DNA of 64,000 nucleotides from Macrostomum hystrix (lineage: Eukaryota; Animalia; Platyhelminthes). Positions 16,546 through 42,065 of the stretch are shown in pieces (within the stretch, counting starts at the first letter, position 1; the number at the start of each line of letters is the position of its first letter). Both the position numbers and the translations under genes were made by a program. Below the pieces are notes generated by a model, which saw nothing but the letters and a program-made list of their open reading frames with translations, did no database searches and was not told the DNA's origin. The DNA lies in NCBI GenBank assembly GCA_950097015.1, contig CATNEN010000007.1, forward strand, positions 372,001 through 436,000. Direction: 5' to 3'.

Positions 16546-17855
16546 TTGTAATTAGCTCAACTGGGCTGCTTTTATCAGTGACTGCGCAATTAATGGAGCA
16601 TTCTGACTAAGACTCACTTTAGTTGATCACTTTTTGCCGATGGACTTCGTAGCATATTTTATATCATTTATGCTTTATTTTTTGGAGTTCTGATTTTTCA
16701 TCGCTTATCTTTTCCCATTGATTTTAGAAGACTTTAACACTAATTTAGTTTATTCTGGTCTCGTGTTCTTTACGCAAATGAGTACAGTAATAATGCTTTT
16801 CTAATTAAGTATGAAACAATGTACACTCTCATTCTCGGTCGTTCATGCGAGTAATCCTGAAGCTATTTTTAGCATCGGTTGACCCATGGAAATCCCACGG
16901 CAAGGCCTGGCAGTTCGCTATTACCAGAACACACCAGACTTGGCAAAGTGAAGTTGCTTACTCAGCCCTAGTTGAAAGGTATTTTATTCCGTAAAATGTT
17001 AATGAATTAAAGCTTTAGTTTTTTATTTCGTTTTATATTTGCTCATCATCGCAAAAATGGTAAGTTCTGGAATTGATCGCTTGCAATCTTTTTCGCACTA
17101 AAGCACAACAATAATTTTCTACGAGTATATATCGAATCGAAGTTCAGATTGCATCAAATAGTTGCGTGTATTAAAAACAAATTGGACTAAATACAGCGCG
17201 GAATCCTTCCTTCAACCCTTCTAGTCGCATCTTTTCTATCAGGAAATCCCTGTAGAAGTTCAAGTAGGTAAGAATGACGATCTAAATCCTCGTGTTAATG
17301 AGGGTGCTTATGAAAATTTAAGTACTGAAAATAGTTGCATCTCCATACATTCTCTCCAATTCAATTCTATTAGATTACATTCAACGTCCAGATTTTCCTT
17401 TCCGAAACTAGAAGAGAGAATTTAGCTTCTAGCCGGTATTTCCCGTGGTTTTCCCGCGAGATTGCCATGAAGAAGCCTTAAAGGAAACACGGTACTACGA
17501 GTAAGTGCAGTTGGTGTGCACTGCAGCGATCAGACGCCAGAGAGCGTAAATTAGCGACCGAGCCAATGTACATCGTACAAACTACTATACTCGTAGTATG
17601 TCCATAGCTTTGCCGGGCAATAAAAAGTAACAAATTAACCGCGAATCAACTCCCCTTTATACTACTTCAAAAAGTAACTTCGAACTTCGTCATGCGTTCT
17701 CGTGAAGGAAACTATAGACGTAGGATAATATTTAGTTTTAAAAAAATGTTTGGCAACTTTTTTCTGGGTATTACTCTCTCATGGCTACTCAGAAAGATGA
17801 ATGAAACCCATGTCAGAAGTCAGCAACCACAACCCGTCTGCTCCGCTGGGACACC

Positions 17856-20800
17856 ATGGTACAGGAAGAGTCGCAGAAAATGGGTTCAGTCTTAGTGACT
17901 GAGCCGCAGCTGCCAACGCTGACCATTGTGGAGCAGCCGGCACAGTTCCACCGATTTCGATACGAGTCCGAGGTGGAGAAGGAAGGCAGGGTAGGCGGTC
18001 TGCTGCTCGGAAGGAGCTCCAACAATGGAAGCAAAAGCTACACGAAGGTGCGAATCAGCGGCATCGACCCCGCACAGCACTCTCAGCTGCAGCTCATTGT
18101 GTGTACAGTGAGCGCAGAGGACAAGGCGCCGCACCCGTACTACCTTCACGGAGACAACTGCAGTGACGGCTTCTTTCTGCTCAAGAAATCCGTTAACTCC
18201 ACATTCAAGGGAGACAACTTGGATATCAGGTAACTGTTGAGATATTTAAAATGGCAATCACAGTTCCGTTTTCTCTCCAGCCACAAACCTAAAAGCTTCG
18301 GTGAATGTTTTCAAGCTTCAACAGGCTGGCCGTCATCTGCGTGCCAAAGAAGAGCAAAGATGACATCCGCCGAGGCATGGAGATCAGGCTCAAGAGTGTG
18401 CCGCCTTTGCCAGACTGTAAGTAAGCCCCGATGATTTAGAAAACCTACTTTTAAGCCATACCATTTTTTCTTTATGTAAGCAGCTGAACTTTACTGGACA
18501 GATATCGAGAAGTCGACAGTGAAGTATGACAGCCGGAATATTGACAAAATTCGCCTGGCCTTCTCCTTGTCATTCATTGACACTCTGGATCAGAACTGGT
18601 ATCTTCAAACTGTGTTCAGCGAAGAGATCGTAGCCCAAAGTAAGTCGATCTGGCAGTACCGATTGAATGGTCTTAGAGATTAGCACTAGTATTTGTTATT
18701 AAATAATCTAGGGTTCCTAATAGTAACTTAATTGTAGTTGAGGATGCTGTCATGCCGTAGTCTAATAGCACTCACGTATCGCTTTGCCGGTCAATCTAAT
18801 ATGTACATGCATCACTAACTCTCGCTCACTATGTACATGCCCCCCACGCGCACGTTGATCGTATCGGTTGCACGTTGAGGCAAATATATAAATACTGTCT
18901 CGCCCTACTTGGAGGGCTCACCTTTTTCTTCGCACCTCACACAGCTTGACTCTTGAGCTATTACATTGGCGTCGCAAGGCCGAACCATGGCCTTCCTACA
19001 ACTGCCTCCACCAGCCCACTTTAGCATCAGAGACGACCCTCACTCTGTAAGCAAGCGCTGGCAGGAGTGGTCGACCAACCTTCTGCGGTACCTGGCGGCA
19101 ACCGGCATCAAAGATGAGACGCAGAAACGCCAGATCCTTCTGTATACGGCAGGCAAAGAAGTGAGCGACCTGTAGAACGAGATCCCCACCCAGTCGCAGC
19201 AACAAGAAGGCGAGCCCGCAGCCGAGCCCACGGTCGACCAGCTGATCGCACAGTTCAGCACGCACTTCCAAGGCCGCGATAACGTCGTCTTCATTCGATA
19301 CCAGTTTCGCCACTGTCTCCAGGAAGAAGGCGAATCCATAGACGCTTGGCACAGCAGACTGTGGAGCGCCTCGGAAGCCTGCAAGTTCGAGGGTCTCCGC
19401 CAGTCGCTCATCAGGGACCAAATCGTGGCCAGCTGTCGCAGCGAGTCACTGAGGAAGCGCCTGCTGAATATCCCCAACATCAGCCTGTCGGACACTCTCC
19501 AGCTGGCCAGGACGCACGAGGCAGCAGAGAAGCAGGCGGCCATCATGACCAGGACAGCGGCAGCCTCTGAGGAAGTGGCGCAACTGCGCCGCCAGGGCCA
19601 CCCGCTGCCGGAACCTTCGCGTGAGTCGCAGCAATTTGCTAAGTGCATCCGGTGCGGCGAGCTGGGCCACAAGAGCTGCAGCAGGGCGCAAGGCAAGCGA
19701 TGCAGCAGCTGCGGCAAGGCCAACCATCTGGCCAAGGCCTGCCTCAGCAGCCGCTCGAAGATTAACTCACTGCAGCCCGAGCAGGACCAATCAGCCGACC
19801 AACAACCCAACGAGGTGTTCTGCACGCTCAGCGGCAAGGACGACAGCGCCAAGTTCGTCATCAGAATCAACGGCAGTCCGGTCCGCACACTGATCGACAG
19901 CGGAGCGAGCTGCAACGTGTTGGACATGGCGACGTTCCACAGAATCTGCCGGCCCGGCACGCCGCTTTCGCCGTCCAGCACCACAGTCTTTGCGCTTGGT
20001 GCCAGCGAGCCACTGAAGACAGCCGGCCAAACAACGCTCACTGTCAGAGCGAACCACCGCGAATTGCAGGCTAATTTCATCGTCATCAGCAGCAACTGCA
20101 CACCGATTCTCGGAAGATCGTCCAGCACAAAGCTCGGCATGCTGAGAGTCGGACCTGAAGTCAGCACGAACTCTGCGGTGGTGGCCAGCCTAGCTAAGCC
20201 GGCCAGCAGTGAGGACCAGCACCTGCCCAAGCAGCTGCAACTTCAGACAATCCTGGCGGAATTCAGCGACTGCTTTCAAGGCATCGGATGCGTGAAGGGA
20301 GTCAGCGTCACTATCAGGCTCAGGCCGGATGCCACTCCAGTCTGCCAGCCGCCATCCCGAGTGCCCGTTCACCTAAGGAATGCTGTAATCAAGGAGCTGG
20401 AAGATCAACTGGCACTGGGAATCGTCGAACGAGTGCGTGGTCCAACAGCCTGGTGCTCCAGGATGGTCGCAGTTCCAAAGGCCGAGCAGGGCGAGGTTCG
20501 CATCACCCAGGACCTCCGCGAGGTGAACAAGTACGTCATCCCAGAGAAGCAGCCTATACCCACATTCGAAGAGGTGACGGACGAGATGGCGGGCGCGACG
20601 TATTTCTCGGAGCTGGACGTCGCCAAAGCCTTCCACCAAATTGAAGTCGCCGAGGAGTCTAGAGACGTGCTAACATTCTCCTCACCCATCGGGCTCCTGC
20701 GGCTGCGCCGGCTCTGCATGGGCTTCACATCCGCCTCCGAGATCCTCCAGCGGGTGATGACCTCCGTCCTGAGTGGCCTCCCCGGCGTCCGCTGGGTGCA

Positions 20801-23800
20801 CGACGACATCCTGGTGTACGCGAAAAACATTGAAGAGCACAACCAGCGCCTGCGAGACTGCCTGGCCCGGTTGAAGGCCAGCAACATCACCTTGAACCCC
20901 AAGAAGTGCCGCTTCGCTCGACCAGAGGTCGACTTTCTCGCCATGCGGCTCTCTGCATGCGGCATTCACCCAAGCGCCGAGAAAGTAGCGGCCATCAACA
21001 ACTTCAAGCGGCCGACCAACGCAACCGAGGTGCGCTCCTTCCTCGGCCTCGTCACCTTCGTGGCGCGCTTCATCAGCAACCTGTCTGACAGGGCCCGGCC
21101 ACTCCGCGAGCTGACAAGGCAGGCCGCCGAGTGGACGTGGGGCGAAAAGCAAGAGGCCGCATTCAACGACATCAAACAGACGATCGCCAGCAGCCACGCG
21201 CTGGCATTCTTCAATAGTGAGCTGCAGACTCAGCTGATCGTGGACGCCAGCCCCACGGGTGTCGGCGCCATCCTTGCCCAAGTCCAGCCAGACGGATCGA
21301 CGCGGCCGGTGGCATACGCGAGCCGCAGCCTCAGCCCGACCGAGCAGCGCTACTCCCAGACGGAGCGAGAGGCCCTCGCGGTGAAGTACGGCGGCCTGAA
21401 GTTCTACCACTACCTCAGCGGGGGTGGCAGTTTCAAGGTCATCACCGACCACAAGCCGCTGATATCCCTGTTCAGCACGGGGTCTCGGCCGCCACCCCGC
21501 ATTGACCGCATGGCGCTGCGACTGCAAGACCTTGTCTTTCGGGTCGTGTACCAGCCCGGCGCCGGCAACCCGTCTGACGTCCTGAGCCGCCAGCCGCTGC
21601 CAATGCCACCAAACAACGTCAGCCTGGGCACAATCAAGGCGGCCTCCGAACGAGACGGCACGGTACAAGCAGCGCTACACGCCATCCGCGGCCACCAATG
21701 GGACAAGAGTGACACGTGCCTGCAGGGACTCCATGGCGTATCCCACGAACTATCCGAGCTGAACAGCCTGCTGCTGCGCGGCAGTCAGCTGTACATGCCG
21801 ACGACTCTGTGATACCGGTGCATGCAGCTGGCCCACCAGGGACACCAGGGCGTCAAAAAAACGCTCGACCGCTTGCAAGCGAAGGTCTGGTGGCCAGGCA
21901 TGCGAGCATCCGTGGAGGCGCACGTAGCAGCCTGCACCAGCTGCCTGACCTGCACCAGCGAGACCTCGCCGAAAGCCACGCCGCTAAAGCCGACCGAACT
22001 GCCGGAGGGCCCCTGGCTCGAGCTGGGGCTCGACTTTCTCGGACCGATAAACGGCAAGTCGCTGCTCGTCTGTACGGACCACTTCTCCAGGTTCCCGCTC
22101 GTGGAGGTCATGGCCAGCACCACCGCCTCCGCCGTCATCAACGTGCTACGCCGGTGGTTTAGCATCTTCGGGCAGCCGACAAAGGTGACCACAGACAATG
22201 GCCCACCCTTCGCATCGGCCGAGTTCAGCAGCTTCCTGATGGATCAGGGCGCACGGCACCATCGGATCACACCTCTCTACCCTCAGGCCAACGGCGCAAC
22301 GGAGCGGTGCAATCAAGGGCTGAACAAGGCTATCCGCGCAGCGATCGTCGAAGGCAGGGACTGGACACTGGCCCTGGACGAGTACCTGGCAGCGTACAGA
22401 CGCACTCCGCACTGCTCCACGGGCGTCGCGCCGGCCAGTCTGTTATTTGGCAGGCAGATCAACGATGTGATCCCGAGTCTCCGACACTCGCAGCCCGTCG
22501 ACGCGACTCGAGCGGCCATTGCCGACAGCGACAGACAGGCCAAGGAGGCTATGAAGCGGCACGCCGACCGACGCTTCAGAGCCGCCGACCACGGCATTCG
22601 CGCCGGCGACCGCGTCCTCAGGCGCCAGCAGTCCCGGCAAAAGACCGACGCCTTCTACGAGTCGGCGCCGTGGACCGTGGCCGAGGTGCAAGGCGACTCC
22701 CTGCTCATGCAGCGCGACGACGTCGTCTGCCGCAGGCACGCCACGCAGGTCAAGCGGCTGCCCGGGCAGCCTGAGCAGTCCGATCAGCAGCCGCTCGAAC
22801 CTCCCGACGCCCCTGAGCTCGCGGAGCCAGTCGCAGCCCGGCTCCACCCCCGGCGGGCGAAGGACCCAGAGAGGAACTACAGAGAACCCGACCTGCGCAG
22901 AAGCTGAATTGCTTGATTGACAGACTAAAGTTACAAGGACTGTTCTAAAAACTTATATTGTTGCCTGCTACTACTTCTTTCATTTTATTCCCTATGATTT
23001 TTCATCCACTTGAGGAGGACTGTCATGCCGTAGTCTAATAGCACTCACGTATCGCTTTGCCGGTCAATCTAATATGTACATGCATCACTAACTCTCGCTC
23101 ACTATGTACATGCCCCCCACGCGCACGTTGATCGTATCGGTTGCACGTTGAGGCAAATATATAAATACTGTCTCGCCCTACTTGGAGGGCTCACCTTTTT
23201 CTTCGCACCTCACACAGCTTGACTCTTGAGCTATTACAGATGCATTAGGAAAAGAGGAACTATTGAGGACTAGCGATCTTTGATTGTGCGTCTTTGAGAC
23301 TGGTTCCTTTGTCTGAGCGTGAAATCTGGATTCTGAAATACTAATCAAATCAATCCGAGCCCCAAGTCGATCGAGTTGTATAACCCGTGAGCCCCAATGA
23401 TGGCATTTTCTTGCAGAGGAAAAGAAGTCGATCGATGTCGATAGCCTCAATCCGGCTGAGGTTCCAATAAGCGGTGGCGGCCTTGTTGCCATTCTAACCA
23501 AGACGCCCACGACAGGTACGTCACAACAGGCTTTACTTGAATTATGTTTATGACCAACCAGGCGAGGCTATATGTTTCCTCTTGACTTAAACAAATATAT
23601 TTTAGGAATTTCTAAAGGCAGCGTCCGCATTCATCTCAGTCCGTTGCACGAGGGGTCGAATGTCAAAATGCCTAATTTCTACGACTTGGAGGACATGAAG
23701 AAGGTAATTAGCATTCCTAGGTAATCTCTACGAGCGTGAGTGATATCCATACATGTAGCTCCATGGAAAGTAATAAACTAAACCGTCGAAAATTTTGCAG

Positions 23801-24902
23801 CACCTGCTAGTTTTCCGAACTCCAAAGCTGACACCCTACACAAAGAACGATCGGCTAAAGTGCAGACTGACCGTTCAAAGCAATGGGTTCGTCAGCGAGG
23901 AGCTAGATATAGTCTTCAGTAAAAATGCCTCGAACGTTGGAGCCGGTAAGTCTGCTGCATTCTTTGGACTTGCAGCCAAGTTATTAGAACTTATAGTTAT
24001 TGCTTTTGGTTCTTGGCTCAGTGGTTCTTGGCTCAGTGGTTCTTGCTCTTGGTTCGTGGCTCAGTGGTTCTTGCTCTTGGTTCGTGGCTCAGTGGTTCTT
24101 GCTCTTGGTTCGTGGCTCAGTGGTTCTTGCTCTTGGTTCGTGGCTCAGTGGTTCTTGCTCTTGGTTCGTGGCTCAGTGGTTCTTGCTCTTGGTTCGTGGC
24201 TCAGTGGTTCTAGCTCTTGGTTCGTGGCTCAGTGGTTCTTGCTCTTGGTTCGTGGCTCAGTGGTTCTTGCTCTTGGTTCGTGACTCAGAGGTCTTGCTCT
24301 TTGTTCGTGACTCAGTGGTTCTAGCTCTTTGTTCGTGACTCAGTGGTTCTAGCTCTTTGTTCGTGACTCAGTTGTTCTTGCTCTTTGTTCGTGACTCAGT
24401 TGTTCTTGCTCTTGGTTCGTGACTCAGTTGTTCTTGCTCTTTGTTCGTGACTCAGTTGTTCTTGCTCTTGGTTCGTGACTCAGTTGTTCTTGCTCTTTGT
24501 TCGTGACTCAGTTGTTCTTGCTCTTGGTTCGTGACTCAGTTGTTCTTGCTCTTTGTTCGTGACTCAGTTGTTCTTGCTCTTTGTTCGTGACTCAGAGGTC
24601 TTGCTCTTCGTTCGTGGCTCAGTGGTTTTTGCTCTTCGTTCGTGGCTCAGTGGTTCTTGTTCTTGGCTAGTTGCTAACTGGTTCGTGTTCTTTGGTTCGT
24701 GGCTCAGTGGCTCAGAGGTTTTGTCTTGATGATGTTATTTATTTTGTTATCACTGCTTTGAAATGGAGATCAATTTTGAGGATTTATTCTTATTTGCTGC
24801 TCAGTGGACATATTTTTGGCTGATTTCAATGACATTCAAAAGCTCTTAGCATAAATCTGCATTACAGCAAGTTGGAATGCGCGCAAGAGACCTATCAAAT
24901 AG
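17856..24902 (+). CDS. Rel/NF-kB-like RHD-only gene 1; exons 17856-18229, 18316-18416, 18484-18639, 23417-23515, 23606-23703, 23801-23945, 24868-24902, about 335 aa
   Basis: LTIVEQPAQFHRFRYESE (Rel recognition loop), PHPYYLHGDNCSDGFF (compare RelA PHPHELVGKDCRDGFY), FNRLAVICVPKK, IDKIRLAFSL..TVFSEEI, IPT LNPAEVPISGGGLVAIL, LLVFRTP, then ARKRPIK-stop. All junctions are GT-AG and the total length is a multiple of 3. The true first exon may be upstream (ATG|GTAAGT at 17057). Confidence 0.85.
18748..23238 (+). mobile_element. Ty3/Gypsy (Mag-like) LTR retrotransposon, full length, in intron of RHD gene 1
   Basis: 218-bp LTRs at 18748-18965 and 23021-23238 (TG..CA, identical by eye); 5-bp TSD GATGC; PBS-like TGGCGTCGC at 18967; PPT gaggaggac at 23012-23020. 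Confidence 0.97.
18987..22907 (+). pseudogene. Gypsy gag-pol single frame with two premature stops (TAG 19173, TGA 21810)
   Basis: Two CCHC knuckles, protease LIDSGAS, RT (DLREVN..FSELDV..MGF..VHDD), RNase H (VDASP..ERE..TDHKPL), integrase (HQGHQG, LDFLG, DNGPPF, NGATER). ORFs 18966, 19425 and 21822 are all in the same frame. Confidence 0.93.
24005..24720. repeat. 28-bp minisatellite, about 25 copies, in last intron of RHD gene 1
   Basis: Unit gttcttgctcttggttcgtggctcagtg, drifting to ...ttgttcgtgactcagtt along the array. Confidence 0.95.
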
Positions 24903-29291: not shown

Positions 29292-32236
29292 ACCCAGCAC
29301 CAGCCGCCAACGCTGTCCATCAAGGAGCAGTCGGATCAATTCTACCAATTTCCGTACGAGTCAGCGGTGGAGAAGCACATCGATCTTGTCACCTACGAGC
29401 TGCCTGCTGAGTCTCAACAGCTCAGTCAAGTTTTGCATGATCCGCCGACGCTGACCATTGTGGAGCAGCCGGCACAGTTCCACCGATTTCGATACGAGTC
29501 CGAGGTGGAGAAGAAAGGCAGGGTAGGCGGTCTGCTGCTCGGAAGGAGCTCCAACAATGGAAGCAAAAGCTACACGAAGGTGCGAATCAGCGGCATCGAC
29601 CCAGCACAGCATTCTCAGCTGCAGCTCATTGTGTGTACAGTGAGCGCAGAGGACAAGGCGCCGCACCCGTACTACCTTCACGGAGACAACTGCAGTGACG
29701 GATTCTTTCTGCTCAAGAAGTCTGTGGACAGGGAAACTTGCAGGACCATTTGGGATGTCGAGTAAGGGCCAACTTGAACTTGTACATAATCGATAATTCT
29801 AGAAAAGTATTCCATTTTTTACCTATTTCACACGCAGATTTGTCAGATTGGCGGTCATCTGCGTACCGAAAAAGAAAAAGGAGGACATCAACAAGGGCGT
29901 GGAGGCCAGGCGCAGAAATGTTCCAGCGCTTCATGACTGTAAGATTGTGATTCTCTTATCCTATTTAAGTGGGTCGACAGTTTTAATCCTTCCTAAGTTT
30001 CCGAGTTTATTTCGAAAGTTTTAAAGAAAACAACAAATTAATGCGCTTAAACTTAAACGCCCTGTTCAACTAGTTGCCTATAAAAAATTAACTAGGACAA
30101 TGTTAGTCTGCTATCTGAAGAAAAAAGAAACTGCACTGGATTAGAACAATAGAACTGTTCAATATCGGGGCCGTATGCATCTACAACGTAACAGTAATAT
30201 TATTTGTTTCTTGGTACAACAGAACCTTTCTGTCAGAACTTGGTAGACTGCCTCAATTGTATGATATACAGAAAAGAAGCTTCCAGTTCTGGTTATCCCT
30301 ATCTCATCGTCCAGACTCCAATTTATCTAAGCTTATAGGGACCCGGAGTACAGCGAAGTAGACATTGCAACACAAATGTACTGCAAAACTGTTCTCTCAG
30401 TTCAAAGACAAAGTCTGTTAAAATTCACAGAGAAAACTTTCTATGTGATTTCCTAGGACACTGGAGACAGAGGGCAAAATTTCTGCAAAGCTCAGCCATT
30501 TCTACTGCAGTTTCAAGAGAGATTTCTGCCGTGAAAAATATCTATCAAATGTTTCAAACCCGGAACACAGGTGCATATTGTCAAATTTTCGTTTAGGAAA
30601 TCACAGATAAGCGAAACGATGCGTTCTGTTCGCCCGAAAATCCCTTATCCAAACAGAATTTTCCTGAAGTGCAAAGTCGGGGTCGAAAATGAAGTGCATT
30701 TTCTTTTCCGGTGCAACTGGGATCCTAATAAGGCGGTCAGGGAAAATTTCGTTGCACAGACATTTCATCCAAAGCTAAGAAATTTCGTGGTCTCACAGAA
30801 GAAGACAAAAGCATTTTTAATGGTGCAAGAAAATACAGATGTGACAGGAAAGCTAGCAAAGTACAGAGAAAACTTAGCACAGTTTGCAGCTGCCCTAAAA
30901 AGTGTAAAAAGTGTTCTTTTAATATGGTTAGCAACATCACAATATGGTAAAAGTATGCGTGCCAAGCTCGTTTTTCGCATTTTATTTCTACCGTGTAAGC
31001 ATTACCAATATGATTCCTTTCGATGCATCCGATTTGAAGTTAATTTTTAACCTTACTATATTGTTACTATTGTTACATTTGAATAATAATAGCGAATAAC
31101 TATTCACAAAATAAAAAAATTTGCACTTTTAAAGCATGCGCAAAGTAATAATAACAACAAAATTATCGCATAAATTTGCTAAAATGATTTCTTTCGAAAA
31201 AAGAATAAAATAAATGAAAAACAACTACTGTAGATCCTACTTTCAAAGTATTCAGTGTGCTACACTGAATACATGCATTGCTGGTATGGATTAGCAGTCA
31301 ATAAAAATCCTAATAGAACCACCCGTGTTCTCTCAGGCCCAGCTGAGCCGACAATGGAATACACCAGCAGCAATCTTGGTCGCATTCGTCTGGCCTTCTC
31401 ACTCTCATTCACGGACACCAATGGTGCCTCCTGGTGTCTTAAAACAATTTTCAGCGACGAAATTTCCAGCGACAGTAAGACCATGACTGTGTTTACTATT
31501 GTACTTGTAAATTAGAAATTATAGTTTTTTATCAGAGCTCATTGTTCCATTAAGTTGCAACGCTCACTTATCTGTCATCAGAAGCAAACAAGACCATTGA
31601 AGTTCAGGACATGAACCCTTACGAACTGCCGATGGAGGGCGGCTGCCTTGTTGCCATCCTCACCAGAACTCCAACCACAGGTGCCTTCTGCTCATTGTTT
31701 CAATGCTTAGTGCAAAGTGGCTCAAATACCAAGAAGACTGCCTTGATGTTTCAGGTCATTCAAAGAAGGACGTGAAGGTACATTTCACTGCGACCAACAC
31801 TCATACGAACGAGAAGTTTGAACTCAGGATGGACTTGTTTGATATGAAAAAGGTAAAGCATTTTACTCGATATACTTGCATTTGAAACTCAGATGAAGGG
31901 ACTGTGGATTGACTTGGCTCGAATGTAATGTTTCGATGTCGATTGCAGCACCTTATGTTGGTCAAGGCACCAGACATGAGACGCATGACTGACAATGAGA
32001 AACTGAAGTGCACAGTGACAGTCCACAGCCAAGGATTCGTCAGTGAGGAACTTCATGTGGTCTTTGTAAGACCTGGCAATTCAAATGTTAATACAGGTAA
32101 GTGGCTTGTTGAGGAACAACATGCGAGCATACCAATTGCGGTTTCCATGTTTTTTTGGAATCTTAAAGACTCAATCAACTTTCGCAACCGTCATTCAGCT
32201 GCAGGAAAAGGGAATCCGCTGAAGCGAAAACGATAA
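29292..32236 (+). CDS. Rel/NF-kB-like RHD-only gene 2; exons 29292-29761, 29838-29938, 31337-31474, 31582-31680, 31755-31852, 31949-32096, 32205-32236; first exon upstream (candidate 27385-27432)
   Basis: Same exon layout and phases as gene 1. EQPAQFHRFRYESE, FVRLAVICVPKK, NLGRIRLAFSL, MNPYELPMEGGCLVAIL, HLMLVKAP, ends GNPLKRKR-stop. Length is a multiple of 3. Confidence 0.85.
30350..30950 (+). mobile_element. Probable 3' remnant of a non-LTR retrotransposon in an intron of RHD gene 2
   Basis: ORF 30571-31050 contains RIFLKCKVGVENEVHFLFRC, resembling the C-terminal C..C..E.E.HF...C knuckle of LINE ORF2; no RT core visible. Confidence 0.45.
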
Positions 32237-33452: not shown

Positions 33453-34000
33453 AACAGTAGAACTAGCAAGAGGGGATTTCTCCCCTGAAAACTTTTTGTA
33501 ATGCACCCGAAAGGAGCAACTCAAGGACACGAAACTCAAGAACACGCGCCAAATTTTTGTTGCGCATTTTCAGAAACAAGAATCAAGTCGCCAGCCCTTC
33601 AGACCGTCGAGATATTTAACGGTTCTGACCGAAGGTCTGTTTTTTCCGTAAGAGCTTGTGTATTTCATACACAACTGTACAGAAATTTGCACTGCGCCTC
33701 AGTGCGGCCTTGCCAGGCCTTCAAACTTTATCAGCTTGTCACCCGAATGTGCCTGCATCAATTCCGAGTTTAGGCCAATATCAAGGCTTGATCAGTGAAA
33801 CAAGAAAACTTCGCATTAGGAATTCCTCCATTGCCAGCTGGACAACCCTGCTGACGGTGCTGACGAAGTCGGGGTGGTGACTGATTAGTTGACAGACTAG
33901 GCGAGGGTCCTGTGGTTGAGCTTTGTCTTGAGGCCTGATCAGCGAAATGGAAGAAACTCACATCAGGTTGTCCATATTCGGCTGGTGCCACTTGTTGAAG
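33453..34000. mobile_element. Foldback/MITE-like element, partial (left arm + centre)
   Basis: Starts aacagtagaacta..ggggatttctcccc; collinear with 41114-41720. Confidence 0.75.
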
Positions 34001-35000: not shown

Positions 35001-36930
35001 CCTGCTGACAACGCCGTACAGCCGCCAACGCTGTCCATCAAGGAGCAGTCGGATCAATTCTACCAATTTCCGTACGAGTCAGCGGTGGGGAAGCATATTG
35101 ATCTTGTCACCTACGAGCCGCCTGCTGAGTCTCAACAGCTCAGTCAAGTTTTGCATGATCCGCCGACGCTGACCATTGTGGAGCAGCCGGCACAGTTCCA
35201 CCGATTTCGATACGAGTCCGAGGTGGAGAAGGAAGGCAGGGTAGGCGGTCTGCTGTTCGGAAGGAGCTCCAACAATGGCAGCAAAAGCTACACGAAGGTG
35301 AGAATCAGCGGCATCAACCCCGCACAGCACTCTCAGCTGCAGCTCATTGTGTGTACAGTGAGCGCAGAGGACAAGGCGCCGCACCCGTACAGCCTTCACG
35401 GAGACAACTGCAGTGACGGCTTCTTTCTGCTCAAGAAGTCTGTGGACAGGGAAACTTGCAGGACCATTTGGGATGTCGAGTAAGGGCCAACTTGAACTTG
35501 CACATAATCGATAATTCTAGAAAAGTATTCCATTTTTTACCTATTTCACACGCAGATTTGTCAGATTGACCGTCATCTGCGTACCGAAAAAGAAAAAGCA
35601 GGACATCAACAAGGGCGTGGAGGCCAGGCGCAGAAATGTTCCAGCGCTTCATGACTGTAAGATTTGTGATTTAATTTGCCCAGTTATATAAGTTTTTAAC
35701 TTTCAAGTTTTTTAGCTTTTTAATTACTCGTAATTTAAAAAAGGTAGCAAAGGTAGCTAAATTAAAGCGTTGCAAACCTAAAGGTTGTTCTTTTACTTCA
35801 ATACTTTAAAAACATAGTGACCTAGTTTTAGACGGATATCTTGACGTCCTACGCATTTTCTTTTTTTCATGTAGAAAATATTGTTTTTTTGCCTATTACC
35901 TATCATATGAATATATCTGGATGTATTAATACAATGTTTTTCTATTTTATAGCAGAGAATCCGGATGATAACAGATAATGTAAGTATTAGCAGTCAATAA
36001 AATCCTAATAGAGCCACCCGTGTTCTCTCAGGCCCAGCTGAGCCGACAATGGAATACACCAGCAGCAATCTTGGTCGCATTCGTCTGGCCTTCTCACTCT
36101 CATTCACGGACACCAATGGTGCCACCTGGTGTCTTAAAACAATGTTCAGCGACGAAATTTCCAGCGACAGTAAGACCATGACTGTGTTTACTATTGTACT
36201 TGTAAATTAGAAATTATAGTTTTTTATCAGAGCTCATTGTTCCATTAAGTTGCAACGCTCACTTATCTGTCATCAGAAGCAAACAAGACCATTGAAGTTC
36301 AGGACATTAACCCTCAAGATCTGCCGATGGAGGGCGGCTGCCTTGTTGCCATCCTCACCAGAACTCCAACCACAGGTGCCTTCTGCTCATTGTTTCAATG
36401 CTTAGTGCAAAGTGGCTCAAATACCAAGAAGACTGCCTTGTTGTTTCAGGTCATTCAAAGAAGGACGTGAAGGTACATTTCACTGCGACCAACACTCATA
36501 CGAACGAGAAGTTTGAACTCAGTATGGACTTGTTTGATATGAAAAAGGTAAAGCATTTTACTCGATATACTTGCATTTGAAACTCAGATGAAGGGACTGT
36601 GGATTGACTTGGCTCGAATGTAACGTTTCGATGTCGATTGCAGCACCTTATGTTGGTGAATGCACCAGACATGAGACGCATGACTAACAATGAGCAACTG
36701 AAGTGCACAGTGAGAGTCCACAGCCAAGGATTCAACAGTGCGGAACTTCATGTGGTCTTTGTAAGACCTGGCAATTCAAATGTTAATACAGGTAAGCGGC
36801 TTGTTGAGGAACAACATGCGAGCATACCAATTGCGGTTTCCATGGTTTTTTGGAATCTTAAAGACTCAATCAACTTTCGCAACCGTCATTCACCTCAGGA
36901 AAAGGGAGTCCGCTGAAGCGAAAACGATAA
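35001..36930 (+). CDS. Rel/NF-kB-like RHD-only gene 3; exons 35001-35479, 35556-35656, 36032-36169, 36277-36375, 36450-36547, 36644-36791, 36899-36930; candidate start micro-exon ATG|GTAAGT at 33298
   Basis: Close paralog of gene 2, including most introns; ends GSPLKRKR-stop; frame intact. Confidence 0.85.
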
Positions 36931-38084
36931 CCGCGGTAGGAAATTATTTAATTCTGACATGCATAAGGTCAGCTGTTTGGACAGCGCTACCCCACTGGAT
37001 TTTAATGTTTCGATATCCCTATTGACTATCGCAACCAACATCGAATTGCAGAGCACAGAAATCTGCTAAAGAGAAAGGTCGACACACGAGCTATAACTGA
37101 TAAATGCTTTGACTGTAACTTACGAGTACATCTTAACAAAGACTAAGGACCAAGATAGAGTCAAAGTAATCTGATATTGAATAAAATTGTACTATTGCAG
37201 TTAGTTTTTACCGATAAGTTTATTACTCAAAATCGTAGAAAAAATGCTCTTGGAACCAGTAGAAGGACTGCACTGAAGAACTCGACAATGTACTCGACGC
37301 TGTCTACTCATACAGCATCCAAGATTCTTACACGATCCATTTTTAATCGTATTTGAAAATTGCTACACAAAAGCCCTTTATCTTTCTTTTTGTTATTGGC
37401 GCACCCAAAGAAAAAAATAAATAAACAACAAGTTTTTTCAGTAGAACTCTTTCAGAGTTAATGTTACAACAAGCTATATATATTTACATCGCTTAGTAAT
37501 TTACTGGCTTGGTCTCTTTGTGACAGATACAGAGTAGCACAACAAAGCAATGCTACTTTCGCTTAAGTAGCTTGAGCGAATATGAAAATATTACTTATCT
37601 TCTTTGGCGGTTAGCAAACTGTGATGTTGTGTGTGCAATCACTTTTCTAGAGATTCGTCACGTACAAGATGGAACAACAATGGAACGACCTATTTGTGTT
37701 TTAAATTTTATTTTAGCAGTGACGTGCATTTGAGAAGTTCCATCTACTGTACATATTGAGCAGACCTTATGAGCAATATAGAGACGGGTACTCATATTCC
37801 AACCTGATAACCAGTGCCTTTCTAGTTTTCATTTTAGAAAATACAATAATTTAGTAGACAAGCAAGGACTGCAGCCTGAATAGGTTCAAAAATTGGAAAA
37901 AATGGTAAGCTTAGCATTCACTAAGAGGACATTGTTGAATTTGTAATAAAAATTCTAACTATGGAATTAAGTACCATTATTCTTCCAGATGATCCCGACT
38001 CACAATACTTATATTAGTTCTAGCGCCCCTTCCTTGAAATAAGGGGGTAACTTTTTGTTACAATGGGTTTGTGCCAGATTGGGA

Positions 38085-38385
38085 CTGTGTCATATCGGGA
38101 TTGTGTCATATCGGGATTGTGTCAAAACGTGATTGCATCATAACGAGATTGTGTCATAACGGTATTGTGTCATGACGGGATTGTGTCATGACGGGATTGT
38201 GTCATGACGGGATTGTGTCATAACGGGATTGTGTCATGACGGGATTGTGTCAAAACGGTATTGTGTCATGATGGTATTGTGTCATGACGCGATTGTGTCA
38301 TAACGGGATTGTGTCAAAACGGTATTGTGTCATGATGGTATTGTGTCATGACGCGATTGTGTCATAACGGGATTGTGTTATATCG
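38085..38385. repeat. 16-bp minisatellite, about 18 copies
   Basis: Unit gggattgtgtcatgac, upstream of the first large exon of RHD gene 4. Confidence 0.92.
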
Positions 38386-38592
38386 ACATTGCCTAAAATT
38401 TCACTTCGTGGCAATGGCATTCAGGCAATGGCCAGCCATTGTATAGAATTAATTGCCCCGTAGCAATAGGGTTGATGTAAAATTTAACCAATGATTTTAT
38501 CTAATGAGTCGTAGGAAGTTACAGTATGAGGCAATTTCCTTTGACACCAGCGGCGATAGCCGCTGATTTCCTGTGAACCCTCCATTGTGCAG

Positions 38593-40776
38593 ACAGTGAT
38601 TGTAAACGGAGCTAAGAACAAAGCAATTTGCAATACTCAAAAAAGCTACCGAGTCACAATAGCTGACAATTTCCAGCTTGAACAGGCGGAGCGGGGCCCA
38701 GCCCTGTCAATTCTAGCGCAGCCGGCCAGGTTCTACCGGTGCCTGCCCGAATCCCGAGTCAGGAACGGCAGATTTAAACGGCTGGTCGGCAGAAATCAGG
38801 AGGACTCTACTAACATGTACATGAAGGTGCGCATCGGTGACTTTGACCCAGGCAGTCATCGGCAGCTGCAGCTGACTGTGTGCACTGTCAACGCCGAGGA
38901 CAAGGCTCCGCATCCGTTCCAGCTGTATGGAGACAACTGCGAGAATGGCTACTTTGCACTGGAGAAGTCTGTGGCAAAGCTGGCTGGCAAAGAGTTTTGG
39001 GATATTTGGTGAGCAGAAGCATGTGTTGTTAGCTATACGAGCTACTCTTTCACTTGTGTTTTGCCCTTGTCCGGTCCAGTCTCACTTCCTCCTGTACCCT
39101 CCTGTACTGCTCGCTAAGCCAGAGTTCTCTGATTGGCTGAGGCCCCTCGATCGCCCTCGCCATGCTGCGGCTCTGCTTAGTCATGCCCTACCCTTTTGCC
39201 CTAACCCCAGCCCCAATCCGACGGCCGACACAAACCGGTTTTGCGGGTCGGCGCCTGATTGGTCGGCCTCACCCCACGTTTCTCTTTCTGCCCCGTCAAG
39301 GCGTCACCAGGTATCCCCGTCTCGCACTTTAAAACTCGGCCCTTAACTGAGTATCAACTACAAACGGGCCAAGCGAAGAGAGCTAGTAAATAGGAAATTG
39401 AAACCAGCAGCAAAAATTCTCTCGAGCCGTCGCGCGTATATTTAACGCCTCCAACGAATGAGTAGTGCAACATTTGACCCCTCCCCGGTAAGACTGGCAA
39501 CTACAAATTTATCATTTCCTACACCTCAATCCGTTTTACCTGTTATTGTTACTTTATATTCAGTAGGATCTAATGGGCTGTCCGCTTATCCCTTGTTATT
39601 ATTCCCAGTCGAGTGGCCATCCGCATATTGGGCCACGTTTCAAACTATATTTTCGAGACAAGGAATGTCCGTACGCTTCTTGTCCATTAGTTACCCCCCC
39701 GACGCCGAAGTGTCTGAACGCCTCGAGGGTTTTCGGCCCTCTTTCCTCCTTCTCTCTTCCACAATGAACCCCCGGGCTGTCCAAAACTCGAATCCCATGC
39801 AAGAAAACTTCAACACATACAACAGTACAAAACCTGCTGTCGACTGGCGATAAAAAAATTGAAAATGAGCCGTTGAACTTTCTTTTATTCAGCTTTGACA
39901 ACCTGGCCATCATTAGCGTGCCTAAAACTGCGGATGGAATCGAAGATGGCATGAATACCAGACGCCGCAATGTACCCAAACTGTTTGACTGTGAGTTGGT
40001 CCCATAATTACCCGGAGTTTAGCCTTGCTTCTAAATAAGAACAATTTTGCACTAACTAAATTTGCGTACAGGTCCTATCGAGCCGTTGGCCCAGTACCAG
40101 AGCGACAATTTGGGCCGGATTCGTCTTGCTTTCTCGCTCTCCATCATGAATCCAAATGGGGAGGTCAGTTTCCAGAGGACCCGGTTCAGCGAAGAGATTA
40201 TCAACGAAGGTAGGATCTCAGAAGATATGAGCATAGTTTTAATTGACCTCAAGGTGAAACTCACGCATCTCAATTCGCAGATGACAGAAAGGACATCGAA
40301 ATCCAGAAGCTGAATCCTGCCAAGCTTCCAATGAATGGTCGCTGCACTGTTGCCATCTACACAATGAGAACCACTGCAGGTGCCCCTTTTTGACCATCCA
40401 TTTGCTGTGCATCTAAAATAAACAATGCTTATTGCTGAAGTTTACAAGTTTATACTGCCACGCTTTTCAGGCATCGACAAGACTCAAGTGAAAGTCACAT
40501 TGACTGCAACAGGAGCAAATGCAGGCAATTCACCTCTAGAGTGCAGAGTTTTAACCATGAAAAAAGTATCGCTTTTTGCTGAATTTTCAAGCATGCTTTG
40601 CATTGATTAATGTATTTGGTTGTGCATTTTGGTCGATTCTTTTTCAGCGTCTCTTGGTGGTGGAAACACCGGACATGGCAGGCGAGACCAGTTCTTCCGT
40701 ACTGCGCTGCTTGATCGCCGTCAGCAGCCACGGCTTTGCGGGTACTCAGCATGAGCTGCAGTTTGTGAGAAACTAG
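38593..40776 (+). CDS. Divergent Rel/NF-kB-like gene 4 lacking DNA-contact residues and NLS; exons 38593-39008, 39893-39990, 40072-40209, 40281-40379, 40471-40565, 40648-40776; candidate start micro-exon ATG|GTAAGC at 37902
   Basis: LSILAQPARFYRCLPESR, PHPFQLYGDNCENGYF, FDNLAIISVPK, NLGRIRLAFSL, LNPAKLPMNG, LLVVETP, ends LQFVRN-stop. Phases are consistent and the length is a multiple of 3. Confidence 0.8.
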
Positions 40777-41113
40777 TTCACCAGTCCGACATTTTCTCAC
40801 AGTCTCAGCCTTGTGGCCTTGCTCAGCTGATCTGTGACCACTACGAGAATAGTTTGAGAACACAAAAACGTTTATAGGTACTTCGGAGATAAACTAGGAA
40901 TGATTCTCAAGTCTTATACTTCTCTGCTTACGCTCATAATACAGGTAGATATATAGAAGCGACTAATTGGCTTTCTCCCGGTCATTTCCAAGAAATGGAG
41001 ACGTTGAGTGCAACCTTACAAAATAATTTCTTACGAATAACCAAAATATTTCTACTCGCAATGCCATTCATGAGTTCATTTGAATGCGCATGTGATTTCA
41101 ATGTCACCACTTC

Positions 41114-42065
41114 AACAGTAGAACTACCAGGGGGATTTCCCCTGACCATTTTTGTGCTGCACCCGAACGGAGCAACTCCAGCACACGAAACTCAAGAACA
41201 CGGGCCACATTTTTGTTCAGAAACAAGAATCAAGTCACCAGTTCTTCAGACCGTCGAACTATTCAATTGTTCTGGCCGAAGGTCTGATTTTTTTCGGTAA
41301 GAGCTAGTGCATTTCAAACACCCAATACACAAACTTGCACTGCGCCTCAGTGCGGCCTTGCCAGGCCTTCCAACTTTATCAGCATGTCACCCGAATGTGC
41401 CTGCATCATCTCCAACTTCGGTGGTCATCGATCTCTATCTAGACGGAATACTGGACCTTCAAAAAGTAATCCTTGAGATTTGGCCAACTCGTATCGAGGC
41501 TTGATCAGGGAAACTACGAAGCAAGAAAAATTCACTTTAGGGACTCCTCCATAGCTAACTGGACACGCTGCTGACGGTGCTGATGGCGTCGGGGTGGTGA
41601 CTGATTGGTTGACAGACTAGGTGACAGTCCTTGTGGATGAGCTTCGTCCCCATATTGAGGCTTTTATCAGCGAAATGGGAGAAATTTTCATCAGGGTGTC
41701 CAAATTCGGCTGGTGACACTTGTTGAAGGCCCAGCAGCTCCGTCTAGATAAAGGTCGGTGACCACGGAAGACATAGATAATGCAGGCACATTCGGGAACT
41801 GAGGCGCAGTGCAAATTCGTGTATATGGATGCATGAAATACAGTAGCTCTTACGGAAAATTCTGACCTTTGGCCAGAACCGTTGAATATCTCGACGGTTT
41901 GAAAAGCTGTCGACTTGGTTCTTGTTTCAGAAGAACAAGTTGGGCCGTGTTCTTGAGTTTCGTGTGCTTGCGTTGCTCCGTTCGGGTGCAGCACAAAAAA
42001 ATTCAGGGGGTAAATCCCCGTCGGTTTAAAAACAGCGGCAAAAGGGCTTGGTAGTCCTTACTGTT
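41114..42065. mobile_element. Foldback/MITE-like element with about 350-bp imperfect terminal inverted repeats
   Basis: 41114-41460 is the approximate reverse complement of 41720-42065 (e.g. tgctgcacccgaacggagcaac / gttgctccgttcgggtgcagca); termini aacagtag...ctactgtt; no ORF. Confidence 0.8.

What the first reader, a model, noticed from the sequence alone, without database searches (positions are those of the whole stretch)
38593..40776. Gene 4 looks like a DNA-binding-dead, NLS-less decoy paralog
Seen: its loop reads QPARFYRCLPESR against QPAQFHRFRYESE in genes 1-3, so the positions equivalent to RelA R35, Y36 and E39 become L, P and R. It stops at LQFVRN* before the NLS exon. All six exons remain in frame and the IPT dimerisation domain is intact. 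Known: R33/R35/Y36/E39 make the base contacts, and the IPT domain mediates dimerisation. Inference: a built-in dominant-negative that heterodimerises with the other paralogs, blocking DNA binding or retaining them in the cytoplasm, i.e. an IkB-like role performed by an RHD protein.
Basis: partly seen in the sequence, partly recalled or inferred. Interest (0 to 1): 0.8.

Follow-up and report, generated by a model that had tools for sequence, protein, structure and literature searches.

The report
Loop-altered, tail-less flatworm Rel paralog
The fourth gene of a tandem array of flatworm (Macrostomum-type) Rel/NF-kB-like genes has lost the amino acids that read DNA and its nuclear-import tail, yet still looks like a maintained coding gene, so it could be a natural inhibitor of its neighbours; neither its expression nor any activity could be tested here.

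Summary
Four Rel-homology (RHD) genes lie in tandem on the + strand. Gene 4 (38593-40776) has six GT-AG exons in one frame. Its recognition loop reads RCLPESR where genes 1-3 read RFRYESE, changing the RelA R35, Y36 and E39 equivalents. It stops at a TAG where the paralogs run on to a donor and a mini-exon encoding a KR cluster.

All relatives found are Macrostomum lignano proteins, a lineage-specific family of short RHD proteins. Gene 4 is the only copy without the R/Y pair and, apart from one M. lignano protein with a weak tail, the only one without the KR tail. No M. lignano ortholog was found.

Gene 4 is not an old pseudogene. dN/dS against the paralogs is about 0.3-0.4. Exons 2-6 evolve no faster than in the paralogs, while exon 1 is about 3-4 times faster. 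An intact frame and splice sites are very unlikely after the neutral divergence needed to remodel the loop.

The decoy reading is plausible but unproven. No RNA data, dimer test or DNA-binding test was possible. Cytoplasmic retention is mechanistically weak, because a partner's import signal would carry the dimer in. The remodelled loop is unusually basic (+7). A young pseudogene cannot be excluded.

The parts
38593..39008 (+). Gene 4 exon 1: N-terminal half of the RHD DNA-binding domain. It begins at a CAG acceptor in phase 0 and has no ATG of its own at the start.
   Evidence: Pfam RHD_DNA_bind gives only 19 bits (E 0.0015), starting at profile position 26, so the loop part is not matched. 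The gene 2 exon gives 47.8 bits.
38719..38799 (+). Remodelled recognition loop L1 (QPARFYRCLPESR...VGRNQ). The RelA F34/R35/Y36/E39 equivalents are C/L/P/R, the family motif GRVGGLLLGR is changed to GRFKRLVGR, and the net charge is +7.
39893..39990 (+). Gene 4 exon 2. The basic patch KK(K/S)K of the array paralogs, aligned with c-Rel/p65 VKKK/VKKR, is reduced to KTAD.
40072..40209 (+). Gene 4 exon 3, the end of the N-terminal domain. The split codon at 40209 plus 40281-40282 encodes D where 15 of 17 family members have K, the residue aligned with the Arg of c-Rel/p65 DNRA (RelA R187).
40281..40379 (+). Gene 4 exon 4, the start of the IPT-like C-terminal domain (IEIQKLNP...VAIYT).
   Evidence: The family profile aligns this stretch with c-Rel/RelB ELRICRVN...GGDEIFILCDKV.
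40471..40565 (+). Gene 4 exon 5, the middle of the C-terminal domain.
40648..40776 (+). Gene 4 exon 6, the end of the C-terminal domain. It ends LQFVRN then TAG (40774-40776), 6 to 9 codons before the point where the paralogs reach their phase-1 donor.
40765..40770 (+). Cryptic donor-like GTGAGA (phase 0), three codons before the TAG. Its use is untested, and the homologous FVR codons of genes 2 and 3 also read GTAAGA.
38065..38385 (+). Twenty copies of a 16-nt unit (GGGATTGTGTCATATC), about 200 nt upstream of the gene 4 exon 1 acceptor. It could be regulatory, but its role is unknown.
17817..24902 (+). Gene 1: seven exons, tail ARKRPIK*, ortholog of M. lignano type A (P0002).
29292..32236 (+). 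Gene 2: seven exons. The terminal mini-exon 32199-32236 encodes AAGKGNPLKRKR*.
35001..36930 (+). Gene 3: seven exons. The terminal mini-exon 36899-36930 encodes GKGSPLKRKR*.

Best explanation
Gene 4 is a still-coding, old and divergent member of a Macrostomum-specific array of short Rel-homology proteins. Its DNA-reading part (exon 1, above all loop L1) has been released from the family's constraint or reshaped, and it has lost the R35/Y36/E39-equivalent contacts. An in-frame TAG has cut off the C-terminal KR (import-signal) mini-exon. The rest of the N-terminal domain and the IPT-type domain evolve at the family's normal rate. The most likely mode of action, which is inferred and not shown, is pairing through the IPT domain with the array paralogs or with itself. 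Such dimers would have only one competent DNA-reading subunit, or none, so gene 4 would act as an attenuator or dominant negative in the way Id proteins do for bHLH factors. Nuclear entry would then be by piggy-back or diffusion. IkB-like cytoplasmic anchoring is not expected.
For: Shown:
- The loop and tail changes are real.
- Gene 4 is unique in this respect. Every other aligned member that includes the loop, and all 13 M. lignano loop copies, keep the R/Y pair. All but P0031 (KSLRR) have or can splice to a K/R tail.
- dN/dS of gene 4 against genes 1-3 is 0.27-0.43 in both exon 1 and exons 2-6. Genes 1 and 2 compared with each other give 0.30-0.35 in exons 2-6.
- Relative-rate counts: in exon 1 there are 25-28 gene-4-specific changes against 5-8 in the other copy (p 1e-4 to 3e-3). 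In exons 2-6 the counts are 30-35 against 22-30, not significant.
- In L1, 7 of 18 family-invariant residues are changed; in the C-terminal domain 1 of 11.
- Many L1 codons differ at two or three bases, read directly.
- Simulation: the chance of no stop and 20 intact splice bases is 0.01 at 10% neutral divergence and 0.001 at 15%. Changing about 30-45% of residues needs about 15-30%.
- GC3 is 0.60, like the paralogs, against 0.465 in the gene 4 introns.
- The family profile matches c-Rel, RelB and p65 at E 1e-20 into the IPT domain.
- The AF2 model of P0002 (pLDDT 79) matches two-domain RelA/RelB at E 1e-21, and its C-terminal domain matches p52/p50/RelB dimerisation domains.
- The TAG lies in the last exon, so nonsense-mediated decay is not expected (general knowledge).
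Against: - There is no expression evidence: no sequencing run was listed, so read laying could not be used.
- No ortholog was found in M. lignano. Gene 4 branches outside all other array members with 88% support, so conservation of the derived state cannot be shown.
- A neutral period as long as the gene 2/gene 3 divergence (dS about 0.035) would leave the frame and splice sites intact with probability about 0.18.
- The exon 1 damage is not confined to L1: 10 of 34 invariants elsewhere in exon 1 are also changed.
- No ATG starts the ORF. It depends on an upstream exon or on the spliced leader's terminal AUG.
- No AATAAA or ATTAAA occurs within 1.2 kb after the stop.
- No kB-like site lies upstream of gene 4, unlike genes 1 and 2.
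- Dimerisation of gene 4 was not modelled, because the spliced protein has no reference to hand to the structure tool.
- Pfam does not detect RHD_dimer in any family member.
Confidence: 0.4

Rival explanations
1. Gene 4 is a recently inactivated copy, a young pseudogene. After a long functional history the gene lost its purpose. The TAG and the damage to exon 1 are the first lesions, and the rest has not yet had time to decay.
For: - A premature stop plus loss of family-invariant functional residues is what decay looks like.
- About 29% of the other exon 1 invariants are also changed.
- There is no start codon of its own.
- There is no polyA-signal hexamer within 1.2 kb after the stop.
- There are no kB-like sites upstream.
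- No ortholog was found in M. lignano.
- An intact frame is still fairly likely (0.18-0.37) for neutral divergence up to 3.5%.
- Expression is unknown.
Against: - The L1 remodelling involves many double and triple codon changes and two in-frame deletions. It needs far more divergence than an intact 325-codon frame and ten splice sites tolerate under whole-gene neutrality (P about 0.001-0.01).
- Exons 2-6 show no rate acceleration.
- The only stop falls after the last structural residue, in roughly the last 4% of the ancestral ORF.
- GC3 is maintained.
- The charge shift of L1 to +7 is directional, not random-looking.
Confidence: 0.3
2. Gene 4 is a functional paralog with a new nucleic-acid-binding or other activity, not an inhibitor. 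The very basic new loop would give a different DNA or RNA specificity, non-specific backbone binding or an internal import signal, and the protein would act as its own factor.
For: - The L1 net charge is +7 against +1 to +4 in all 15 relatives. Three acidic residues were lost and basic ones gained, including E39-equivalent to R.
- The R33 equivalent is kept.
- The acceleration is confined to exon 1, which fits positive selection as well as relaxation.
- M. lignano keeps milder loop variants (YGFRYESQ) in at least two loci together with intact KR mini-exons, so loop diversification recurs in this family.
- At 324 aa the protein is small enough to enter the nucleus without a signal (general knowledge).
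Against: - Pro at the Y36 position and Leu at R35 remove two contacts that are invariant in Rel, NF-kB and NFAT proteins.
- The K aligned with RelA R187 is D, and the KKxK patch is reduced.
- No classical K(K/R)x(K/R) motif is left anywhere in the protein.
- No test of binding was possible.
Confidence: 0.2
3. The IkB-like cytoplasmic retention model: lacking an import signal, gene 4 would hold its partners in the cytoplasm.
For: Gene 4 lacks the C-terminal KR cluster that the other members carry, P0031 having only a weak KSLRR tail.
Against: - Gene 4 has no ankyrin repeats or any extra domain; it ends with the IPT domain.
- Nothing in it could mask a partner's tail, so a heterodimer keeps one KR tail. 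In the known IkBa:p65:p50 complex one free NLS suffices for import (general knowledge).
- Absence of a signal is not an anchor.
Confidence: 0.05

Closest known systems
Engineered trans-dominant Rel/NF-kB mutants with substitutions in the RxxRxRxxC recognition loop (p50 and p65 loop mutants; recalled from the literature, not checked here)
   Same: They have an intact dimerisation domain and a destroyed base-contact loop. Heterodimers bind DNA poorly and inhibit wild-type subunits. Gene 4 carries the natural equivalent of such substitutions at R35, Y36 and E39.
   Different: Those are laboratory constructs that keep the NLS. Gene 4 is a germline gene, also lacks the KR tail, and its dimerisation and inhibitory effect are untested.
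Id / Extramacrochaetae proteins of the bHLH family
   Same: They are natural paralogs that keep the dimerisation module, lack the DNA-contacting part and titrate their relatives. This is the mechanism proposed here.
   Different: The fold is unrelated (HLH versus Ig-like RHD). Id proteins lack the basic region altogether, whereas gene 4 keeps the whole N-terminal domain with a remodelled, more basic loop.
IkB proteins and the ankyrin C-termini of p100, p105 and Relish
   Same: They are inhibitors of Rel dimers encoded within or beside the Rel family.
   Different: They are defined by ankyrin repeats that cover the NLS and the DNA-binding surface. Gene 4 has none, so it is not a member and is unlikely to work the same way.
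RHD-only short Relish isoforms MsRel2A/B of Manduca sexta (PMC4742911)
   Same: They are RHD-only proteins. Co-expression with Dorsal-RHD suppresses promoter activation, which the authors interpret as inhibitory heterodimers.
   Different: The MsRel2 isoforms activate promoters on their own, so their DNA-binding function appears intact. They arise by alternative splicing, not as a separate loop-altered gene.
M. lignano array paralogs with loop YGFRYESQ (L001 about 22279, L005 about 6822)
   Same: They belong to the same family and array type, and their recognition loop is altered at the R33 and E39 equivalents and in the following GRVGG motif.
   Different: They keep R35/Y36 and an intact KR mini-exon (SGT(S/A)(L/V)KRAR..). 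Gene 4 has lost both.

Membership tests
Rel/NF-kB/NFAT superfamily (Rel homology region) | N-terminal RHD DNA-binding domain (Pfam PF00554) | tested here: inconclusive
   Gene 4 exon 1 alone scores 19 bits (E 0.0015), below the 27-bit cutoff, and the match starts at profile position 26. Gene 2 exon 1 scores 47.8 bits. Full-length M. lignano relatives score 55-63 bits over profile positions 1-168. Gene 4 aligns with them over its full length at 42-48% identity, so homology is clear even though its own Pfam score is sub-threshold for the one piece tested.
Rel/NF-kB/NFAT superfamily (Rel homology region) | Recognition loop R-x-R-Y-x-x-E with base-contacting Arg, Tyr and Glu | tested here: not met
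   Gene 4 reads R-C-L-P-E-S-R. The R35, Y36 and E39 equivalents are replaced. Every other aligned family member that includes the loop keeps the R/Y pair.
Rel/NF-kB/NFAT superfamily (Rel homology region) | C-terminal IPT/Ig-like dimerisation domain | tested here: inconclusive
   Pfam RHD_dimer and TIG are not detected in any family member. The family profile aligns into the c-Rel/RelB IPT domain. The AF2 model of P0002 matches two-domain RelA/RelB and the isolated p52/p50/RelB dimerisation domains. Gene 4 keeps 10 of 11 family invariants there. The spliced gene 4 protein itself could not be folded.
Rel/NF-kB/NFAT superfamily (Rel homology region) | Basic NLS immediately after the IPT domain | tested here: not met
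   Gene 4 stops at LQFVRN. No K/R cluster follows, and no K(K/R)x(K/R) motif occurs anywhere in the protein. Genes 1-3 and the M. lignano types A, B, C and D have RKRP, KRKR, KRAR or KRPL tails on a mini-exon.
IkB family | Ankyrin repeat array that binds the RHD and masks the NLS | tested here: not met
   The 324-aa product consists only of RHD-N plus the IPT-like domain. The pieces scanned gave no ankyrin hit, and there is no room for further domains.
Natural dominant-negative dimerisation partner (Id-like functional class) | Retains the ability to dimerise with family members | not testable with these tools
   No multimer prediction was available and no reference exists for the spliced protein. 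The only support is conservation of the C-terminal domain.
Natural dominant-negative dimerisation partner (Id-like functional class) | Expressed together with its targets | not testable with these tools
   The look-up of sequencing runs listed no run for 38400-41000. No protein of this species was found in the protein collections searched.
Processed or unitary pseudogene | Frameshifts, internal stops, broken splice sites, neutral substitution pattern | tested here: not met
   There are no frameshifts or internal stops, and all ten splice dinucleotides are canonical. Omega is 0.3-0.4. Exons 2-6 show no acceleration. Only the terminal TAG and the exon 1 changes could count as lesions. A very young pseudogene is not excluded.

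The most novel reading that the evidence does not exclude
Macrostomum flatworms carry a private, expanded family of RHD-only Rel proteins, and one array member has evolved into a germline-encoded 'Id of the Rel family'. This would be a subunit that keeps the dimerisation domain but has lost base contacts and the import tail, and that tunes the activity of its neighbours. kB-like site arrays (GGAATTCCC) sit upstream of at least two of those neighbours. It would be a way of restraining Rel factors that does not use ankyrin-repeat IkB proteins.
Probability: 0.3. Interest if true: 0.7.

Novelty: new variant of a known kind. Interest (0 to 1): 0.5.

Why it matters
Rel/NF-kB activity is classically restrained by ankyrin-repeat IkB proteins. 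Loop-mutant subunits that poison dimers are known mainly as laboratory constructs. A naturally evolved, separately encoded RHD subunit of that type would show a second evolutionary route to negative control. It would sit in a flatworm lineage whose RHD family is uncharacterised: one search of the held paper library for 'Macrostomum' with 'Rel homology' returned a single, unrelated paper. The array offers a compact system for testing this in a transformable, RNAi-amenable model genus: four genes, kB-like site arrays upstream of genes 1 and 2, a homogenised DNA-binding exon and divergent dimerisation exons. If gene 4 turns out to be a dying copy, the finding is ordinary.

Tried and rejected
- **RNA evidence.** The look-up of sequencing runs on 38400-41000 listed no run and its cap is one. 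Read laying was therefore never used.
- **Word-index protein search with gene 4 exon 1.** No hit.
- **Exhaustive representative search.** It gave 12 hits, all M. lignano, with best identity 53-57% and none with the RCLP loop. A profile search including the gene 4 exons again found only M. lignano proteins.
- **P0015/P0003 as a gene 4 ortholog.** They share WDICFD and a model ending without an NLS. I rejected the idea. The tree puts P0015 with the M. lignano C/E types. Its genomic copy (L005 14501-18802) has an intact loop HRFRYESE, a phase-1 donor CTGG|GTGAGG and a candidate mini-exon ending KRPLK.
- **A compensated frameshift as the cause of the loop change.** Rejected: the codons differ by scattered point changes and two in-frame deletions (read).
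- **A remnant NLS mini-exon or an alternative canonical exon 1 near gene 4.** tblastn and a pattern scan over 36.9-43.4 kb found none in the ancestral phase. The only candidates are chance K/R-rich ORFs more than 1.2 kb away, in or near a repeat.
- **The M. lignano spliced-leader sequence in the window.** Absent.
- **Pfam on single small exons.** Uninformative.
Full report
**What is there.** The window is eukaryotic DNA. A motif scan finds four copies of a Rel-type recognition loop on the + strand. Those at 17934, 29466 and 35184 read QPAQFHRFRYESE, and the one at 38719 reads QPARFYRCLPESR. I built gene models by hand from tblastn matches between the copies and GT-AG boundaries.

Gene 4 consists of six exons:
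- 38593-39008
- 39893-39990
- 40072-40209
- 40281-40379
- 40471-40565
- 40648-40776

Together they give 975 nt in one frame and 324 codons, followed by TAG at 40774-40776. Genes 1, 2 and 3 (17817-24902, 29292-32236 and 35001-36930) have the same six exons in the same phases. After a phase-1 donor (G|GTAAGT) they add a seventh mini-exon of 32-38 nt whose only notable content is a basic cluster: ARKRPIK*, PLKRKR* and PLKRKR*.

**Mapping to RelA.** phmmer of gene 2 exon 1 against PDB sequences aligns EQPAQF-HRFRYESE with p65 EQPKQRGMRFRYKCE. In gene 4 the R33 equivalent is therefore kept. F34 becomes C, R35 becomes L, Y36 becomes P and E39 becomes R. That R33, R35, Y36 and E39 make base contacts is established knowledge of the p65 and p50 DNA complexes, recalled rather than tested here.

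**What the family is.** The exhaustive representative search with gene 4 exon 1 returned 12 proteins, and a profile search returned 11. Every one is from Macrostomum lignano and annotated only as 'RHD domain-containing' or hypothetical. The window therefore comes from a related macrostomid flatworm that is not itself in the protein collections.

Members are 330-400 aa long. Pfam finds RHD_DNA_bind across the whole N-terminal domain (55-63 bits) but nothing in the C-terminal 130 residues. A profile of the family matches c-Rel, RelB and p65 at E 1e-20 to 1e-18, with the alignment running through the linker into the first strands of the IPT domain. It matches NFAT more weakly.

An AlphaFold2 model of P0002, the ortholog of gene 1, has mean pLDDT 79. 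It aligns over about 320 columns with RelA, RelB and c-Rel (Foldseek E about 1e-21). Its C-terminal domain matches the isolated p52, p50 and RelB dimerisation domains with TM 0.66-0.75. The family is therefore a lineage-specific branch of Rel-type proteins made of RHD-N, an IPT domain and a KR tail, with no transactivation or ankyrin region.

M. lignano has comparable tandem arrays on at least three contigs (L001-L006).

**How unusual gene 4 is within the family.** I aligned 17 sequences: genes 1-4, nine M. lignano array proteins and four more distant M. lignano paralogs. P0015 starts after the loop, so 15 sequences other than gene 4 can be compared there.
- The motif QPxxxHRFRYE(S/T/K)E...(R/K)(V/L)GG(L/I)L(L/Y)GR is almost invariant. 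Gene 4 alone lacks the R and Y, and it reads GRFKRLVGR in the second part.
- All thirteen further loop copies read from the M. lignano loci keep F/Y-R-Y.
- Of residues invariant in the 12-13 other array members, gene 4 has changed 7 of 18 in L1, 10 of 34 in the rest of exon 1, 4 of 15 in exons 2-3 and 1 of 11 in exons 4-6.
- When the outgroup paralogs are included, the figures are 8 of 16 in L1 against 4 of 22 elsewhere.
- Every other member keeps 19-20 of about 20 L1 positions.

Two more positions fit reduced DNA contact. A Lys conserved in 15 of 17 members aligns with the Arg of c-Rel/p65 DNRA (RelA R187) and is Asp in gene 4. The KK(K/S)K patch of the array members aligns with c-Rel VKKK / p65 VKKR and is KTAD in gene 4. 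That patch is not conserved in the outgroup paralogs, so it counts for less.

All aligned members except gene 4 and P0031 (KSLRR) end in a K/R cluster. For M. lignano types B and D, and for the loop variants, I found the mini-exon in the genomic loci.

**Is it a gene or a wreck?** Gene 4 is old. At the DNA level only about 150 nt align with genes 1-3, at 75% identity. Protein identity is 42-48%. On exons 2-6 it branches outside all other array members of both species with 88% support, while gene 1 pairs with M. lignano type A at 97%. No M. lignano ortholog was found.

Pairwise NG86 estimates give dN/dS of 0.27-0.43 for gene 4 against genes 1-3 in both exon 1 and exons 2-6. dS is saturated at 1.2-2.3. 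Genes 1 and 2 compared with each other give 0.30-0.35 in exons 2-6.

A relative-rate count, with each column counted once against the four outgroup paralogs, gives these results (one search agrees):

| Region | Gene-4-specific changes | Changes specific to the other copy | Significance |
|---|---|---|---|
| Exon 1 | 25-28 | 5-8 | p 1e-4 to 3e-3 |
| Exons 2-6 | 30-35 | 22-30 | not significant |

The acceleration is confined to the exon that carries L1 and the first half of the DNA-binding domain. The rest evolves as in the paralogs.

A simulation of neutral substitutions gives the probability of keeping the frame free of stops and the 20 splice-site bases intact:

| Neutral divergence | Probability intact |
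|---|---|
| 3.5% | 0.18 |
| 10% | 0.01 |
| 15% | 0.001 |

Changing 30-45% of residues, as seen for L1 invariants, needs roughly 15-30% divergence. Indels would lower these probabilities further. Many L1 codons differ from the paralogs at two or three positions, and the two length differences are in frame (read). GC3 of gene 4 is 0.60, like genes 1-3 (0.61-0.65) and unlike its own introns at 0.465.

Together these results exclude a long-dead pseudogene. They show that the loop was remodelled while the rest of the gene stayed under constraint. They do not exclude a recent death. A neutral period as short as the gene 2/gene 3 divergence would usually leave no trace, and the TAG itself cannot be dated.

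**The 5' and 3' ends.** None of the four first coding exons has an ATG at its start. Each begins at an AG acceptor on a codon boundary. In M. lignano 20-30% of genes receive a 35-nt spliced leader that ends in ...TTGCATG (PMC8629364). The M. cliftonense and M. hystrix genome paper notes that this terminal ATG is probably a start codon (PMC10468722). If the acceptor at 38592/38593 is a trans-splice site, the leader's AUG would be in frame with exon 1. This is an inference only: the leader sequence is not in the window and no reads were available.

At the 3' end the paralogs' phase-1 donor is not recognisable after the TAG. No mini-exon in the ancestral phase lies within the usual intron distance. 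A donor-like GTGAGA sits at 40765, three codons before the stop. The same FVR codons in genes 2 and 3 also read GTAAGA, where they are presumably unused. No AATAAA or ATTAAA lies within 1.2 kb downstream.

**How it most likely works.** The sequence shows a subunit that lacks three of the four L1 base-contacting residues. It also has a charge reversal at the R187-equivalent position and no KR tail. Its dimerisation-type domain is conserved.

The mechanism is inferred. Dimers containing gene 4 would read DNA with one subunit or none, so gene 4 would attenuate genes 1-3. This is the logic of laboratory loop mutants of p50 and p65, and of natural Id proteins among bHLH factors (recalled knowledge). 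RHD-only Relish isoforms that dampen Dorsal in Manduca are a partial natural precedent (PMC4742911).

Gene 4 has no ankyrin repeats, and a heterodimer would keep its partner's tail, so import by piggy-back is expected rather than retention.

Two observations argue for caution about 'DNA-binding dead'. The new loop has eight basic residues and one acidic residue, a net charge of +7, against +1 to +4 in all 15 relatives. That looks directional and could preserve backbone binding, give a new specificity or act as a non-classical import signal. M. lignano also maintains milder loop variants (YGFRYESQ) with intact tails at two loci, so loop diversification is a theme of this family.

**Verdict.**
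- Maintained, DNA-contact-deficient, tail-less subunit acting through dimerisation: 0.4
- Young pseudogene: 0.3
- Functional paralog with a different nucleic-acid-binding or other role: 0.2
- IkB-like cytoplasmic retention: 0.05

It is a new variant of a known kind, a dominant-negative-type paralog within a dimeric transcription-factor family. It sits in an uncharacterised flatworm RHD expansion. A single search of the held paper library for 'Macrostomum' with 'Rel homology' returned one unrelated paper, a review of NF-kB feedback lists decoys only at receptor and adaptor level in the passages found, and a survey reports no p50/p105 in Platyhelminthes (PMC11432056).

My results agree with those notes.

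**Limits.** All gene models are hand-built without transcript support. The spliced gene 4 protein could not be given to the structure tools because it has no reference.

Noticed in passing
window 29304-29378 and 35022-35096: Genes 2 and 3 carry a second, degenerate copy of the loop segment just upstream of the real one in the same exon: PPTLSIKEQSDQFYQFPYESAVEKH before PPTLTIVEQPAQFHRFRYESEVEKK. This is an internal tandem duplication in which both Arg are replaced (Q and P).
   Followed up: no
window 17817-18229, 29292-29761, 35001-35479 versus the later exons: Exon 1 of genes 1-3 is 88-96% identical in protein (dS 0.07-0.16), while exons 2-6 of gene 1 against genes 2/3 are only 48-50% identical (dS about 1.4-1.5). 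This is concerted evolution of the DNA-binding exon only. The same pattern holds within M. lignano. Gene 4 exon 1 has escaped it.
   Followed up: partly
window 31337-32096 versus 36032-36791: In exons 2-6, genes 2 and 3 differ more at non-synonymous than at synonymous sites (pN 0.035, pS 0.015, ratio about 2.4). The counts are small. This could be relaxed or positive selection after a recent duplication.
   Followed up: no
window 28565-28752, 16303-16546, 16888, 17242, 27039, 27240: kB-like sites GGRAWTYCC occur 12 times against 1.7 expected. They are concentrated upstream of gene 2 (an array of GGAATTCCC units) and of gene 1. None lies in the 1.66 kb upstream of gene 4.
   Followed up: partly
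window 38065-38385: Twenty tandem copies of GGGATTGTGTCATATC lie about 200 nt upstream of gene 4 exon 1. Each contains a GGGATT half-site-like motif. The function is unknown.
   Followed up: no
window 19425-22904: A Ty3/gypsy-type retroelement lies inside the 4.8-kb third intron of gene 1, with protease, RVT_1, RNase H, integrase zinc-binding and rve domains.
   Followed up: partly
window 24007-24710: A 28-nt tandem repeat of 25 copies fills most of the last intron of gene 1, before its KR mini-exon.
   Followed up: no
window 41111-42019 and 33450-34000: A dispersed repeat of about 80-85% identity lies downstream of gene 4 and between genes 2 and 3, partly inverted. It is probably a transposable element.
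   Followed up: no
window 45238-45990 and 50037-51725 (- strand); 8272-8955 (+ strand): The flanking genes are a class C GPCR (7tm_3 plus ANF_receptor) on the minus strand downstream of the array and a lipoyl ligase A/B-like ORF upstream.
   Followed up: no
window 17817, 29292, 35001, 38593: All four first coding exons start at an AG acceptor exactly on a codon boundary and lack an ATG there. This would fit trans-splicing of the Macrostomum spliced leader, whose last three bases are ATG (PMC8629364, PMC10468722). It is untested.
   Followed up: partly
L001 about 22279 and L005 about 6822 (M. lignano): Two M. lignano array genes have the loop (V/T)RFYGFRYESQ, with G at the R33 equivalent and Q at the E39 equivalent, and a changed GRVGG motif. 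Both keep an intact KRAR mini-exon.
   Followed up: partly
L005 18780-18905 (M. lignano): The database model P0015 ends GEDANI by reading through a good phase-1 donor (CTGG|GTGAGG). A mini-exon ending SLKRPLK* follows an acceptor about 85 nt downstream, so the deposited C-terminus is probably an annotation artefact.
   Followed up: partly
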